Source: Macrostomum lignano (Eukaryota). From it: a stretch of DNA of 64,000 bases. Shown piece by piece: positions 7,101 to 15,212 of this stretch (the first letter of the stretch is position 1; every line of letters starts with the position of its first letter). A model generated the notes under the pieces. It saw only the letters and a list, made by a program, of their open reading frames with translations, was not told the origin of the DNA and did not search any database. Location of the stretch: contig NIVC01001360.1 in assembly GCA_002269645.1 (NCBI GenBank), positions 47,237-111,236 on the forward strand, given 5' to 3'. The translations under genes were made by a program, and so were the position numbers.

Positions 7101-8647
7101 ACATACCAAAGACATGCCAAACGCATACCAAACACATACCAAACACATACCAAACACATACCAAACACGTGCCAAACGCATACCAAGCACATACCAAACG
7201 CATACCAAGCACATACCAAACGCATACCAAGCACATACCAAACGCATACCAAACACATACCATGCACATACCTCTAGCAGCTCAGTCCTCTGAGACCCCA
7301 GCCTGCCCACTCACCGGCAGCAGAGACTTCCGGTCGCCAAGGGTTGCTGATGGAGCTGTCGGTTGAAAAAAACATGCGTTTTGTGTTAATAAAACATGCA
7401 AAATTTGTGTTTAGCATTATTTGGACCAGTCTTTGCAGAAAATTTAATGAGTACTAAACTCACTAGCTAGTTAAAGTAGGACTACAGGATATTCTGGTTA
7501 TTTTCATCATACTATTTTCAATTCTCTATGACTAACATTCACGCTAATTGTCAATATCAGCATCCAAGCGTCTTGAAGGCAGCAAGCAGGGCGCTAAGAG
7601 ACCGCTGTGGGCAATAGGGAGACTGGAGATAATGGGGAAAGACTGGGGAAGGAGATGGGATGGGGAGAGACTGGGGGAATGAGGAGATGGGTTGGGGAGA
7701 GACTGGGGGAATGAGGAGATGGGATGGGGAGAGACTGGGGGAATGAGGAGATGGGATGGGGAGAGACTGGGGGAATGAGGAGATGGGATGGGGAGAGACT
7801 AGGGGAATTAGGAGATGGGATGGGGAGAGACTGGGGGAATGAGATGGGATGGGGAGAGAACGTGGGAGGAGAAGATGGGATGGGAGAGACTGGGGAGGAG
7901 AAGATGGGATGGGAGAGACTGGGGAGGAGAAGATGGGATGGGAGAGACTTGTGGGAGGATATGGGATGGGAGAGACTTGTGGGAGGAGATGGGATGGGAG
8001 AGACTTGTGGGAGTATATGGGATGGGAGAGACTTGTGGGAGGAGATGGGATGGGAGAGACTTGTGGGAGGATATGGGATGGGAGAGACTTGTGGGAGGAG
8101 ATGGGATGGGAGAGACTTGTGGGAGGATATGGGATGGGAGAGACTTGTGGGAGGAGATGGGATGGGAGAGACTTGTGGGAGGATATGGGATGGGAGAGAC
8201 TTGTGGGAGGAGATGGAATGGGAGAGACTTGTGGGAGGAGATGGGATGGGAGAGAACGGGGGATGAGGAGATGGGAAGGGAGAGACTTGTGGGAGAAGAT
8301 GGGATGGGAGATACTGGAGATGAGATGGGGAGGAGAGTGTGAGAGGAAAAACACACCTTGCGCATACAAAGTGTCAATCACAGCCCCTTCACAGAGTTTA
8401 GTGCCAAGCGTTAGGGCGATGTCAAAGTTCTTCGATTCCGCCTTCCGACCCTTCTGGCCATAGACGGCAAGCAGTTCCGATTCAGAGGAGGAAGGGGAGG
8501 CAGCCCGAACCCAGAGCTGAGGCTGCTGCCGCTTTGAGACTCCGCCTGACCACCCGCCCCGGCTGCAGAATTCTCGCTGAGACCCGGCAGGCCAGACAGA
8601 AGGACGGACGGACATGCTGGGCAAGGTGAGTGGCCGGCTGATGAGGA
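4173..8647 (-). CDS. Low-complexity (Pro/Gln/Gly/Ser-rich) coding exons: complement(join(4173..4558,5675..5900,7315..7355,8357..8647)); possibly the C-terminal tail of ATAT1
   Basis: Each exon has an AG acceptor and GT donor; phases match (1-1, 1-0, 0-1, 1-end); no internal stops; poly-Gly and poly-Gln tracts. No recognisable domain. Alternative frames/acceptors exist and the final stop lies inside the 14-bp repeat. Confidence 0.55.
4696..5617. repeat. 32-bp minisatellite (CAGTGTGCCTCATGTTATCCATGGTGTACACA), ~29 copies
   Basis: 32-bp period; lies between the 4558 and 5675 minus-strand exons. Confidence 0.97.
5911..6559. repeat. 20-bp minisatellite (GCTTTGGATTGAGGACCATG), ~32 copies
   Basis: Exact 20-bp register. 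Confidence 0.97.
6699..7262. repeat. 11-bp minisatellite (CCAAACACATA), ~50 copies
   Basis: 11-bp period with G/A variants. Confidence 0.95.
7650..8330. repeat. Purine-rich 28-32-bp minisatellite (ATGGGATGGGAGAGACTTGTGGGAGGAG and a 32-bp variant)
   Basis: Tandem G-rich units of two subtypes. Confidence 0.92.
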
Positions 8648-13244: not shown

Positions 13245-15212
13245 GTCTTTTTGTCGGCGACTGCGGATGCGCCGGCGGACGGCCCAGTCTGCCGCCGCTC
13301 CGACCGCGGACTGCCGCACCGGACTCTGCATGGGTGATCGGCGAGGTGCGTGCGGGTGGGTCACTTTTGCAAGCTTAACTGCCTCCCATCTCTTGCCTTG
13401 AACTCTTATCCACTTCAGTATCTTTTGTCCAAAAATCCGGCACACTGAATGGCTGAGGGACAGGGGATGGAGGACCGGAATGGCACACTGAATGACTGAG
13501 GGACAGGGGCTGGAGGACCGGAATGGCACACTGAATGGCTGAGGGACAGGGGCTGGAGGACCGGAATGGCGCACTGAATGACTGAGGGACAGGGGCTGGA
13601 GGACAGGAATGGCACACTGAATGGCTCAGACAGGGGCTGGAGGACAGGAATGGCACACTGAAAGACTGAGGGACAGGGACAGGAATGGCGCACTGAATGA
13701 CTGAGGGACAGGGGCTGGAGGACCGGAATGGCACACTGAATGACTGAGGGACAGGGGCTGGAGGACAGGAATGGCACACTGAATGGCTCAGACAGGGGCT
13801 GGAGGACAGGAATGGCGCACTGAATGACTGAGGGACAGGGGCTGGAGGACAGGAATGGCACACTGAATGGCTCAGACAGGGGCTGGAGGACCGGAATGGC
13901 AGAACGGTATTCCAATAGCCTGTGGATTGAGTTTTAAGAGTTCAACGTATTTTCTCCCTCCCGCTCTCACCGGGTCTGTCGCGGAAGAAGCCGTGGAACA
14001 CCACAAAATTGTTCATCTGCGGGATGCAGTCCTTCAGGCCGTAGTGCTTCTTGAGAAATCCAGCGAATTTCGGTGACGGCCTGTCGATGGCGAGGTGCAC
14101 CGGCTCCACCTGTTCCTGCTGCAGGTGAGATGGCAGGTTTCCCTGGACTTAGTCTTGAGTAACTGCCAGCACTAGCAATGGCTACCTACCTGTAACATGT
14201 ACTCAAATAGAACTTTTCCGTATCCGTGGCGTTGCCGGGACTCGTGAACGTAGAAGTCCAGGACGCAGAGCGGCTCCATCTCGTGCTGCTTTCCCAGCAT
14301 ATCGTAAACAAACAGCTTTTTGCGGCCCATCTTCAGGATGCCAACTACCGCGCCCTGCATGCTGGAAGGGTCCGCTTGAGTCTCTGTTATCCAGGCACTT
14401 GAAAAATTTAAAAATTCGAATGAAACTTTCAAGCACCAATATGCAGGAAAATTAGCAACGACTCACTTATTTGCAAAAGCATCCTTCAAGACGTACAGTC
14501 GATGATCTGAATATTGCAGGCGCTTGAAGCTGGTTATTGCATTTGGCAAGGCCTGGGCCTGTAGATATTTTTTTAGGATAAAATTAGCTGAAAGTTTCTA
14601 ATGAGGTAAGTTTAGAATATTGGTTCTCTAACTTACTTTTCCAGATGCGATTCCCATGTTGTCAATTACTTGCATTAGGTTGTTTCGATGCGAGTCATAG
14701 CTAAAAATTGGTTTATTATCATAATAGTTTATCATCAATGTTGGTTCAAAGCCAAAGGGTTGAAATGTCTGCTTTATTATGCTTTGTTTTACAAATTAGT
14801 GAGAAAATTTATTGTGACTATGTAATTTTTAAAGATCTCGCACTAATAATATCAAAGAAGCATTTATGCCAATGAGGCGCATGTTTAATCTTCTTGCAAT
14901 ACAATAATAATTACTTAAAACAACAAAGCGCATTTAACAACAGTTTACAAGAATCGATATACTATCTGATATTTTAGGTAAAAACTTTTACATGTATATT
15001 TATGGCGGCCATAAAAACTTCTACATTTTTAATACACTTGTAATCAACTATGTCACTGTGTTCAATTAAACAGAAAACTTCTACATTTGATCGCTGACAT
15101 TGAATTTTTTATTTTACCTAGAGCGTTGAAACTTTTGCAGATTGCTGAATGAACTGTCAATGATGGTTATTTCGTCAGACAGCAATGGATTTATGTTAAA
15201 CGTAAATTCCAT
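13245..15212 (-). CDS. ATAT1: Alpha-tubulin N-acetyltransferase 1 (MEC-17 family); complement(join(13245..13325,13971..14118,14190..14361,14467..14558,14637..14700,15118..15212)); 3' end unresolved
   Basis: [19 protein letters not shown] start; [14 protein letters not shown]; [14 protein letters not shown]; [20 protein letters not shown]; LAIDRPS; [13 protein letters not shown]. All match ATAT1, with Q58, C120 and D157 equivalents present. Phases are consistent. Confidence 0.95.
13440..13900. repeat. 41-43-bp minisatellite in ATAT1 intron 5
   Basis: Unit GGAATGGCACACTGAATGACTGAGGGACAGGGGCTGGAGGACC. Confidence 0.93.

What the first reader, a model, noticed from the sequence alone, without database searches (positions are those of the whole stretch)
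8614..15212. Divergent alpha-tubulin sits directly next to an intact alpha-tubulin acetyltransferase
Seen: the tubulin stop (12985) is ~260 bp from ATAT1 exon 6 on the opposite strand. ATAT1 keeps the Q58, C120, D157 and QRHGYG equivalents. Known: ATAT1/MEC-17 acetylates alpha-tubulin K40 in stable ciliary and neuronal microtubules; I know of no general genomic linkage of the two genes. Inference: this could be a dedicated substrate/enzyme pair for a specialised microtubule structure (e.g. sperm, adhesive organ or sensory cells). This holds even if the nesting model fails.
Basis: partly seen in the sequence, partly recalled or inferred. Interest (0 to 1): 0.75.

Follow-up and report, generated by a model that had tools for sequence, protein, structure and literature searches.

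The report
Divergent tubulin gene nested inside ATAT1

Summary
The window is Macrostomum lignano contig NIVC01001360.1.

- **Tubulin:** a 4-exon gene on the + strand (8614-12985) encodes a 560-aa alpha-type tubulin.
- **ATAT1:** it is not merely adjacent. It has 9 exons on the - strand (15212-4173) and ends in the conserved ...HTRLW motif. The whole tubulin gene lies antisense in its intron 6.
- **Support for the models:** all splice sites are GT-AG, and GenBank's RNA-seq-based annotation has the same nested models. All three duplicated copies of the locus in the assembly keep the arrangement.
- **Tubulin features:** it is 39% identical to canonical alpha-tubulins and has no closer relative outside M. 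lignano among 1.84 billion cluster representatives. It is under strong purifying selection (dN/dS 0.04-0.10). It keeps the GTP-binding motifs and K40. It has D251T and E254D at the catalytic positions, and E254D slows GTP hydrolysis and stabilises human microtubules. Its tail is a non-acidic Gly/Ser/Pro repeat.
- **ATAT1 features:** it keeps Q58, C120, D157 and QRHGYG. It is the ordinary metazoan orthologue, not a specialised paralogue.
- **Linkage elsewhere:** ATAT1 loci of an annelid, a bivalve and a rotifer carry no tubulin.

Co-expression and acetylation of this isotype could not be tested. The "dedicated pair" idea is therefore possible but unproven.

The parts
4173..15212 (-). ATAT1 (alpha-tubulin N-acetyltransferase) gene: 9 exons, 424 aa. 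This is the host gene.
   Evidence: The exon model is entirely GT-AG and in frame. It matches the 424-aa gene annotated on NIVC01001360.1, Pfam PF05301 and PDB ATAT1.
15118..15212 (-). ATAT1 exon 1 (start codon at 15212-15210)
14637..14700 (-). ATAT1 exon 2
14467..14558 (-). ATAT1 exon 3. Contains Q55 (human Q58) at 14555-14553.
14190..14361 (-). ATAT1 exon 4. Contains C116 (human C120) at 14267-14265 and the acetyl-CoA motif QRHGYG at 14234-14217. An alternative upstream acceptor at 14397 would add 12 aa.
   Evidence: The orthologue alignment favours the 14361 acceptor.
13971..14118 (-). ATAT1 exon 5. Contains D153 (human D157) at 14085-14083 and the end of the catalytic domain.
13245..13325 (-). 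ATAT1 exon 6. Its GTGAGT donor lies 260 bp from the tubulin stop.
7356..13244 (-). ATAT1 intron 6 (5.9 kb). It contains the whole tubulin gene on the other strand.
   Evidence: The same layout is found in L001 and L002.
7315..7355 (-). ATAT1 exon 7
5675..5870 (-). ATAT1 exon 8 (disordered, Pro/Gln-rich)
4173..4558 (-). ATAT1 exon 9. It ends ...RRHYSHTRLW-stop, the conserved ATAT1 C-terminal motif.
8614..12985 (+). Nested gene for a divergent alpha-type tubulin: 4 exons, 560 aa (GenBank PAA68972.1, BOX15_Mlig020544g1).
8614..8625 (+). Tubulin exon 1 (MLGK)
9193..9701 (+). Tubulin exon 2. Contains the GQAG motif, K41 (the K40 equivalent) at 9301-9303, and GGGTGSG at 9598-9618.
10793..11150 (+). 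Tubulin exon 3. Contains T251 (11022-11024) and D254 (11031-11033), where alpha-tubulins have the catalytic D251 and E254.
12182..12985 (+). Tubulin exon 4. The last 120 codons (12623-12982) encode a non-acidic Gly/Ser/Pro repeat tail, (GSGLD)n plus GPGSK units, ending YYEE.
13100..13105 (+). AATAAA, the likely tubulin poly(A) signal, about 140 bp before ATAT1 exon 6. The mature mRNAs need not overlap.

Best explanation
This is a host/nested gene pair in Macrostomum lignano.

Shown:
- The host is the animal's ordinary ATAT1 orthologue (9 exons, 11 kb).
- Its intron 6 carries, on the opposite strand, an intact and transcribed 4-exon gene for a lineage-restricted alpha-tubulin derivative under selective constraint.

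Inferred from sequence:
- The protein still binds GTP and folds as an alpha-tubulin.
- It keeps the luminal K40, so it could be acetylated.
- It carries D251T and E254D at the two residues that trigger GTP hydrolysis in the neighbouring beta-tubulin. Its H12 motor/MAP surface and its C-terminal tail are remodelled.
- It would therefore most likely build slowly hydrolysing, long-lived microtubules with unusual partner binding in some specialised cell type. A rapidly evolving reproductive cell such as sperm is a guess.

Inferred about the nesting:
- The nesting is most likely a historical accident of where this gene arose or landed, not an adaptive enzyme-substrate module.
- Its most probable cis effect, if any, is transcriptional interference with ATAT1 elongation through intron 6.
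For: Gene models and nesting. The C-terminal HTRLW motif is shared with mollusc and annelid ATAT1. The GenBank models are the same, on three separate contigs, with all splice sites conserved. That annotation is built from RNA-seq transcripts (PMC5730564).

Tubulin function: dN/dS between copies is 0.04-0.10, for example 19 synonymous against 3 non-synonymous differences.

Alpha affinity: about 300 bits and 39% identity to alpha-tubulins, against 175-200 bits to beta-like tubulins. All PDB sequence and fold matches shown are alpha-tubulin or tubulin-complex entries.

Lineage restriction: nothing outside M. lignano exceeds about 41% identity over a full-length match among 1.84e9 representatives.

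Residue changes: 92 of 213 columns conserved in alpha-tubulins are changed. These include D251T, E254D, the T3 loop and H12. GQAG, GGGTGSG, N206, Y224, N228 and K40 are kept.

Experimental background: human E254D slows GTP hydrolysis and nearly abolishes catastrophe (PMC7018511). D251 and E254 are the catalytic residues (PMC10319017).

ATAT1 is the generic orthologue. No tubulin lies at the ATAT1 loci of Lamellibrachia, Pinctada or Rotaria. Nested genes are known to cause interference with their host genes (PMC3192792).
Against: No expression pattern, protein or modification data were found for either gene.

A K at position 40 is the only lysine in residues 5-93 of a protein with 3.2% lysine. 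Two much less divergent M. lignano alpha isotypes have lost it. This hints at selection for an acetylatable site and so at a real link to ATAT1.

A less-than-1% prior for this particular neighbour also argues against pure chance.

The AF2 model is poor in the intermediate domain (pLDDT below 50 for 302-350). Whether the protein still polymerises with beta-tubulin is therefore open.
Confidence: 0.55

Rival explanations
1. One reading: a functional enzyme-substrate module. The nested tubulin and ATAT1 are co-regulated because they share one chromatin domain. Cells that build a special, stable microtubule array would then make both the K40-bearing isotype and its acetyltransferase.
For: K40 is retained despite 61% divergence, while two other M. 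lignano alpha isotypes lack it. D251T/E254D predict long-lived microtubules, which are the preferred ATAT1 substrate (general knowledge). Both genes are transcribed and constrained. All three duplicated loci keep the arrangement. There is a precedent for a single K40 isotype serving as the only acetylation substrate: MEC-12 with MEC-17/ATAT-2 in C. elegans (PMC8987236).
Against: This ATAT1 is the conserved general orthologue, not a specialised copy. The linkage is absent in three other spiralians. The three M. lignano copies are recent duplicates (dS 0.02-0.06), so they are not independent evidence. Antisense nesting favours interference rather than co-expression. The residues flanking K40 differ from the canonical SDKTIG: here they are PWKACA. 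No expression data were found.
Confidence: 0.2
2. An antagonistic switch. Transcription of the antisense tubulin blocks or prematurely ends ATAT1 transcription in intron 6. Cells expressing the tubulin would then make little full-length ATAT1, or a 244-aa isoform with only the catalytic domain and no regulatory C-terminus.
For: The geometry fits: the nested gene fills 4.4 kb of the 5.9-kb intron, directly after the exons that complete the catalytic domain. Retention of intron 6 gives an ORF that stops at 13162, with AATAAA on the - strand at 13007. Nested genes cause intron retention and cryptic polyadenylation in their hosts (PMC3192792).
Against: This is purely structural inference and no transcript evidence was available. 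The annotated transcripts are full length in two of the three copies.
Confidence: 0.1
3. The tubulin is a decaying or non-functional copy, and the pairing is meaningless.
For: It is extremely divergent: 92 of 213 conserved alpha-tubulin columns are changed. It has a low-complexity tail of variable length. AF2 confidence is low in the intermediate domain.
Against: All three copies have intact 500-560-codon ORFs with conserved GT-AG sites. dN/dS is 0.04-0.10. GC3 is 81%. The annotation is transcript-based.
Confidence: 0.03
4. An assembly or annotation artefact fuses unrelated 3' exons to ATAT1, so the nesting is only apparent.
For: The assembly is highly repetitive and redundant. Old ML2 gene models of this locus are frameshifted chimeras.
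Against: Three independent contigs show the same order. Splice phases fit. The last exon ends in the ATAT1-specific HTRLW motif shared with molluscs and annelids.
Confidence: 0.02

Closest known systems
Canonical alpha-tubulin (e.g. TUBA1A/1B; PDB 3j8x, 8snb)
   Same: It has the Tubulin and Tubulin_C domains, and the GQAG, GGGTGSG, N206, Y224 and N228 nucleotide-binding motifs. It has an alpha-length H1-S2 loop with lysine at position 40 and an alpha-type S9-S10 loop. The best sequence and fold matches shown are alpha chains or tubulin-complex entries.
   Different: It is only 39% identical, about as far from alpha as alpha is from beta. It has D251T and E254D at the catalytic T7/H8 positions, and D98G and N101G in the T3 loop. 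About 10 residues are deleted around H10. The acidic H12 surface is changed from GEGMEEGEF to ANGYNRDQF. It has a 120-aa non-acidic Gly/Ser/Pro repeat tail with net charge 0, ending YYEE instead of an acidic tail ending EEY. Its gene has three introns, whereas other M. lignano alpha genes seen here are intronless and clustered.
ATAT1 / MEC-17 (Pfam PF05301; PDB 4gs4, 4hkf)
   Same: It has the full catalytic domain with the Q58, C120 and D157 equivalents and the QRHGYG acetyl-CoA loop. It has a long disordered C-terminus ending in the conserved HTRLW motif.
   Different: It hosts a tubulin gene in the intron that follows the catalytic-domain exons. No tubulin was found in or within 10 kb of ATAT1 in Lamellibrachia, Pinctada or Rotaria.
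MEC-12 / MEC-17 (ATAT-2) of C. elegans touch-receptor neurons
   Same: One special alpha isotype is the only one of nine with K40, and it is acetylated by the ATAT enzymes in specialised stable microtubules (PMC8987236).
   Different: MEC-12 is a conventional alpha-tubulin. From memory, the worm genes are on different chromosomes. MEC-17 is a cell-type-specific paralogue, whereas the flatworm enzyme is the general orthologue.
Engineered human alpha-tubulin E254D / E254A (GTP-hydrolysis mutants)
   Same: The same substitution (E254D) occurs naturally here, and the second catalytic residue D251 is also lost.
   Different: In the human work these are single-site laboratory mutants of an otherwise canonical protein. 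Here the changes sit in a protein altered at 43% of conserved positions, so the effect is an inference.
Protein-coding genes nested antisense in host-gene introns (general class)
   Same: A complete, independently transcribed gene lies on the opposite strand within one intron. Interference with the host gene is possible (PMC3192792).
   Different: Host and nested genes are usually functionally unrelated (my own knowledge). Here the nested product belongs to the protein family that the host enzyme modifies.
Human ATAT1-TUBB neighbourhood at 6p21.33
   Same: From memory only: human ATAT1 lies roughly 80-100 kb from the beta-tubulin gene TUBB in the MHC class I region.
   Different: That tubulin is a beta-tubulin and not a substrate. 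Several genes separate the two, there is no nesting, and this was not checked here.

Membership tests
alpha-tubulin | Tubulin GTPase domain plus tubulin C-terminal domain | tested here: met
   PF00091 at 174 bits and PF03953 at 41.9 bits, both above their cut-offs.
alpha-tubulin | Closer to alpha than to beta, gamma or other tubulin families | tested here: met
   All 60 best PDB sequence hits shown are alpha-tubulin. Scores are about 300 bits to alpha against 175-200 bits to beta-like sequences. The fold matches shown are alpha-tubulin chains or tubulin-complex entries, TM about 0.8.
alpha-tubulin | Nucleotide-binding motifs (GQAG, T3 loop DAANN, GGGTGSG, N206, Y224, N228) | tested here: inconclusive
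   GQAG, GGGTGSG, N206, Y224 and N228 are kept. The T3 loop has D98G and N101G.
alpha-tubulin | Catalytic D251 and E254, which activate GTP hydrolysis in beta-tubulin | tested here: not met
   The residues are T251 and D254. Both positions are at least 90% conserved as D and E in 31 alpha-tubulins.
alpha-tubulin | Lysine 40 in the luminal H1-S2 loop (acetylatable isotypes) | tested here: met
   K41 aligns without gaps to K40. The flanking residues differ (PWKACA).
alpha-tubulin | Acidic C-terminal tail ending in Y or F | tested here: not met
   The 120-aa Gly/Ser/Pro repeat tail has net charge 0 and ends YYEE.
alpha-tubulin | Forms a heterodimer with beta-tubulin and polymerises | not testable with these tools
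   This needs biochemistry. The AF2 model is confident only for the N-terminal domain.
ATAT1 / MEC-17 acetyltransferase | Acetyltransf_16 (PF05301) catalytic domain | tested here: met
   219 bits against a cut-off of 27. 178 bits to solved ATAT1 structures.
ATAT1 / MEC-17 acetyltransferase | Catalytic D157 and C120, substrate-site Q58, and the acetyl-CoA loop Q-R-H-G-x-G | tested here: met
   D153, C116, Q55 and QRHGYG at 127-132. The role of D157 and C120 is given in PMC4964394.
ATAT1 / MEC-17 acetyltransferase | Orthologue-type C-terminus ending ...H(T)R(L/P)W | tested here: met
   The window protein ends RRHYSHTRLW. Mytilus, Crassostrea, Pecten, Lamellibrachia and Ridgeia end ...HTRLW.
ATAT1 / MEC-17 acetyltransferase | Acetylates alpha-tubulin K40 | not testable with these tools
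   An enzyme assay is needed.
Nested (intronic) gene pair | The nested gene lies wholly inside one intron of the host | tested here: met
   The tubulin at 8614-12985 lies within intron 6 at 7356-13244. The same holds in L001 and L002.
Nested (intronic) gene pair | Both genes are independently transcribed | tested here: inconclusive
   Both are models in an annotation derived from RNA-seq assemblies. The reads themselves were not inspected.
Dedicated enzyme-substrate gene module | The linkage is conserved across species | tested here: not met
   It is absent at the ATAT1 loci of an annelid, a bivalve and a rotifer. No orthologue of the tubulin was found outside M. lignano. Sister Macrostomum genomes could not be searched.
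Dedicated enzyme-substrate gene module | The enzyme is a specialised copy | tested here: not met
   It is the only ATAT1 family seen for M. lignano among the best 120 hits, and it is of orthologue type. A more distant second paralogue is not excluded.
Dedicated enzyme-substrate gene module | Co-expression in the same cells, and modification of this isotype | not testable with these tools
   No expression or proteomic data were found.

The most novel reading that the evidence does not exclude
A flatworm-specific alpha-tubulin has naturally lost the residues that trigger GTP hydrolysis (D251T/E254D) but has kept the acetylation site K40. It is embedded antisense in the ATAT1 gene as part of a co-evolved cis-linked module. 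That module would build intrinsically hyperstable, acetylated microtubules in one specialised cell type, for example the cortical microtubules of the aflagellate sperm. If so, this would be a rare animal case in which a tubulin-code 'writer' and a bespoke substrate are physically coupled in the genome.
Probability: 0.12. Interest if true: 0.75.

Novelty: new variant of a known kind. Interest (0 to 1): 0.45.

Why it matters
If the coupling is real, it would give a genetically tractable example of how a tubulin isotype and its modifying enzyme are coordinated, since M. lignano has transgenesis and RNAi. That coordination is a central open point of the tubulin-code idea.

The tubulin is of interest even if the nesting is accidental. 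It is a naturally occurring, selectively maintained alpha-tubulin with the E254D change, which in human tubulin slows GTP hydrolysis and suppresses catastrophe. It also has D251T, a remodelled motor/MAP surface and a non-acidic repeat tail. It could show how cells build intrinsically stable microtubules through isotype sequence rather than through MAPs.

If neither holds, it remains a clean, correctly annotated example of an antisense nested gene.

Tried and rejected
1. **First ATAT1 model.** My first model had 6 exons, with exon 6 read from acceptor 13363 through to a stop at 13221. I replaced it after comparison with the 415-aa GenBank protein and with orthologues, which showed the 13325 acceptor, the 13245 donor and three further exons. 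The exon 4 acceptor at 14397 was likewise replaced by 14361.
2. **Apparent paralogues.** Proteins at 55-89% identity (P0002, P0015, P0032, P0088) are frameshifted models from the older assembly, not true paralogues.
3. **Expression data.** Full-text searches and the supplements of three M. lignano papers did not contain the gene ids.
4. **Prior reports.** A literature search for a tubulin nested in or linked to ATAT1 found nothing relevant.
5. **X-box (RFX) motif scan.** It gave 7 hits against 3.9 expected, none at either promoter. This is uninformative.
6. **ATAT1 orthologue look-ups.** Two failed because the proteins were non-longest isoforms.
7. **AF2 model.** It gave a tubulin fold, but confidence was low (pLDDT below 50) across residues 302-350. 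It cannot settle whether H10 and the interdimer face are intact.
8. **ORF upstream of the tubulin.** The - strand ORF at 8340-8489 has no Pfam match.
9. **Pseudogene and assembly-artefact readings.** Both were rejected.
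Full report
**Source.** The window is genomic DNA of the flatworm Macrostomum lignano. The encoded tubulin matches GenBank BOX15_Mlig proteins at 99-100%. Locus L003 (NIVC01001360.1, assembly GCA_002269645.1) has genes of exactly the same spans as the window: the tubulin spans 4372 bp and ATAT1 spans 11,040 bp.

**Tubulin gene.** A four-exon model on the + strand is in frame, has canonical GT-AG at every junction, and encodes 560 aa. The exons are 8614-8625, 9193-9701, 10793-11150 and 12182-12985. 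It matches Pfam Tubulin (174 bits) and Tubulin_C (41.9 bits). The best 60 PDB sequence matches shown are all alpha-tubulins, at about 320 bits over residues 5-429. It is identical in length to the annotated PAA68972.1.

**ATAT1 gene and nesting.**
- On the - strand, starting at 15212, five exons encode a complete Acetyltransf_16 domain (219 bits; 178 bits to solved ATAT1 structures).
- My first model read exon 6 through to a nearby stop. Comparison with the 415-aa GenBank ATAT1 of a sister locus showed that exon 6 is 13325-13245, with a GTGAGT donor.
- Three more exons lie beyond the tubulin, at 7355-7315, 5870-5675 and 4558-4173.
- The nine-exon model is entirely GT-AG and in frame, and encodes 424 aa. 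It equals the 424-aa gene annotated on this contig.
- Its last residues, RRHYSHTRLW, match the C-terminal ...HTRLW motif of ATAT1 from Mytilus, Crassostrea, Pecten, Lamellibrachia and Ridgeia. The distal exons therefore belong to ATAT1.
- The tubulin gene thus lies wholly inside ATAT1 intron 6 (7356-13244), antisense.
- A likely tubulin poly(A) signal lies at 13100, before exon 6. The mature mRNAs need not overlap.

**ATAT1 residues.** The equivalents of human Q58, C120 and D157 are Q55, C116 and D153. The acetyl-CoA loop is QRHGYG (the human sequence was recalled from memory). D157 and C120 are the residues implicated in catalysis (PMC4964394).

**Replication within the genome.**
- The assembly holds three copies of the locus: L001 on NIVC01001402.1, L002 on NIVC01000868.1, and the window.
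- All three have the order MFS sugar transporter, then ATAT1 with the tubulin nested inside. Every splice site is conserved. In L002, ATAT1 is present but not annotated.
- The copies are recent duplicates, with dS of 0.02-0.06. The sequenced line is known to carry duplicated chromosomes (PMC5730564). They confirm the assembly but are not independent evolutionary evidence.

**Are the genes functional?**
- Between copies, the tubulin core shows for example 19 synonymous against 3 non-synonymous differences. dN/dS is 0.04-0.10.
- For ATAT1, dN/dS is 0.24-0.45, with most changes in the disordered tail.
- The GenBank annotation was produced from genome-guided RNA-seq transcript assemblies (PMC5730564). 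Both genes therefore have transcript support, although I could not inspect reads.
- The pseudogene and 'not transcribed' scenarios are therefore unlikely.

**How unusual is the tubulin?**
- It is 38-40% identical to canonical alpha-tubulins, about 300 bits by BLASTP, against 175-200 bits to beta-like tubulins. Canonical alpha-tubulin against a beta-like sequence gives about 40% identity on the same scale. It is clearly alpha-derived, but as far from alpha as alpha is from beta.
- A word-indexed search of 5.8 billion proteins and an exhaustive HMMER search of 1.84 billion cluster representatives found nothing closer outside M. lignano. The apparent 55-89% 'paralogues' are frameshifted models from an older assembly.
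- Of 213 alignment columns that are at least 90% conserved in 31 alpha-tubulins, 121 are kept and 92 are changed.
- Kept: GQAG, GGGTGSG, N206, Y224, N228, the alpha-length H1-S2 loop and the S9-S10 loop.
- Changed: D98G and N101G in the T3 loop; D251T and E254D in T7/H8; about 10 residues missing around H10; and the acidic H12 surface, from GEGMEEGEF to ANGYNRDQF.
- The C-terminal 120 residues are Gly/Ser/Pro repeats with net charge 0, ending YYEE. Their repeat number differs between the three copies, which are 500, 505 and 560 aa.
- AlphaFold2 with a 32-sequence alignment gives a tubulin fold (pTM 0.73). The N-terminal domain is confident, but pLDDT is below 50 for residues 302-350. Foldseek returns tubulin entries, the inspected chains being alpha, at TM about 0.8.

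**K40.**
- Lysine 41 aligns without gaps to alpha K40.
- It is the only lysine between residues 5 and 93 in a core with 3.2% lysine.
- Two much less divergent M. lignano alpha isotypes, in an intronless three-gene tubulin cluster (L008), have M or R at this position.
- Only 11 of the 31 comparison alpha-tubulins, many of them divergent isotypes, have K there.
- Retention is therefore suggestive of constraint but not proof. The flanking residues (PWKACA) differ from the canonical SDKTIG.

**Mechanistic inference.**
- Alpha D251 and E254 complete the GTPase site of the beta-tubulin below (PMC10319017).
- In recombinant human tubulin, E254D slows hydrolysis, lengthens the GTP cap and nearly abolishes catastrophes. 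E254A blocks hydrolysis (PMC7018511).
- The nested tubulin naturally carries E254D together with D251T. If it pairs with beta-tubulin, I infer that it would yield slowly hydrolysing, long-lived microtubules.
- From general knowledge, long-lived microtubules are the ones that accumulate K40 acetylation.
The cell type is unknown. Sperm is a guess, based on the rapid evolution of the gene.

**Is the pairing meaningful?**

For:
- The product of the nested gene belongs to the substrate family of the host enzyme.
- K40 is kept.
- The predicted stability phenotype fits.
- The prior chance of this particular neighbour is below about 1%, with tens of tubulin genes among 44,328 non-redundant genes.
- In C. 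elegans, a single K40 isotype (MEC-12) is the only acetylation substrate (PMC8987236).

Against:
- The enzyme is the general, full-length orthologue, and it is the only ATAT1 family seen for M. lignano among the best 120 hits.
- The tubulin is lineage-restricted while ATAT1 is ancient.
- ATAT1 loci in an annelid, a bivalve and a rotifer carry no tubulin inside the gene or within 10 kb.
- No other microtubule-related gene was found among the window's ORFs I scanned, which include an MFS transporter, a SCAF11-like protein, a phosphatase, two MATE transporters and an ENPP.
- Antisense nested genes tend to interfere with their hosts rather than be co-regulated (PMC3192792).
- Tubulins have so many functional partners that some chance adjacency in a genome is expected.
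- No paper in the searchable library reports the arrangement.

**Possible interference.** If the tubulin is active, ATAT1 transcripts might end in intron 6. Retention of that intron would give a 244-aa protein containing the catalytic domain only, with a stop at 13162 and AATAAA on the - strand at 13007. This is hypothetical.

**Verdict.**
- The identification is correct.
- The 'dedicated pair' interpretation is plausible in part, since the tubulin could be a specialised, acetylatable, stable isotype. It is unsupported as regards a dedicated enzyme or functional linkage.
- The arrangement and the tubulin variant appear unreported.
- Interest is moderate (0.45). The tubulin, with its natural D251T/E254D changes, is arguably as interesting as the linkage.

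Noticed in passing
window 4693-5616, 5909-6559, 6699-7272, 7635-8329, 8925-9173, 9845-10559, 11183-12032, 13439-13901: The tubulin's introns 1-3 and ATAT1 introns 5, 7 and 8, as well as intron 6 outside the tubulin, each contain their own long minisatellite or microsatellite array. Periods are 4 to 43 bp, with 11-62 copies.
   Followed up: partly
window 4025-4187 (- strand, ATAT1 3' end): The ATAT1 stop codon and its last codons (…CGG CTG TGG TGA) form the first unit of a 14-bp tandem array, CCCGGCTGTGGTGA, that continues into the 3' UTR. There are 11 units here, 3 in L001 and 10 in L002.
   Followed up: partly
window ~14000 (boundary); 14001-22000 against 1-14000: Base composition steps sharply inside ATAT1. 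Exons 1-3 are 36-46% GC and lie in DNA of 30-38% GC. Exons 6-9 and the tubulin are 63-73% GC and lie in DNA of 48-57% GC.
   Followed up: no
window 12623-12982; L001, L002: The coding repeats of the tubulin tail, (GSGLD)n and GPGSK-type units, differ in copy number between the three genomic copies (proteins of 500, 505 and 560 aa). The frame and the terminal GPRYYEE are always kept.
   Followed up: partly
L008 12-1352, 4164-5292, 6001-7458 (NIVC01000387.1): Three other M. lignano tubulin genes are intronless and clustered within 7.5 kb. The two I translated have M or R instead of K at position 40, so some moderately divergent isotypes of this animal cannot be K40-acetylated.
   Followed up: partly
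window 13162-13244 and 13007 (- strand): Reading through the exon 6 donor gives a 244-aa ATAT1 with only the catalytic domain. An AATAAA follows on the - strand at 13007, just past the tubulin stop. This is a possible truncated isoform if the nested gene interferes with elongation.
   Followed up: no
window 14362-14397 (- strand): An alternative AG acceptor 36 nt upstream of exon 4 would insert 12 residues ([12 protein letters not shown]) in frame. Orthologues lack this insertion.
   Followed up: partly
window 44631-46572 and 48979-51000 (- strand): There are two tandem MATE-family transporter genes. Other genes are an ENPP-type phosphodiesterase at 57264-59523 (-), a PHOSPHO-type phosphatase at 26549-27571 (-), a SCAF11-like C-terminal domain at 21588-23735 (+) and an MFS sugar transporter at 1 to about 2290 (+).
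   Followed up: partly
proteins P0002, P0015, P0032, P0088 (older M. lignano assembly, UniProt): These database entries look like 55-89% paralogues of the tubulin. They are in fact frameshifted and chimeric predictions of the same locus, and they could mislead paralogue counts.
   Followed up: yes
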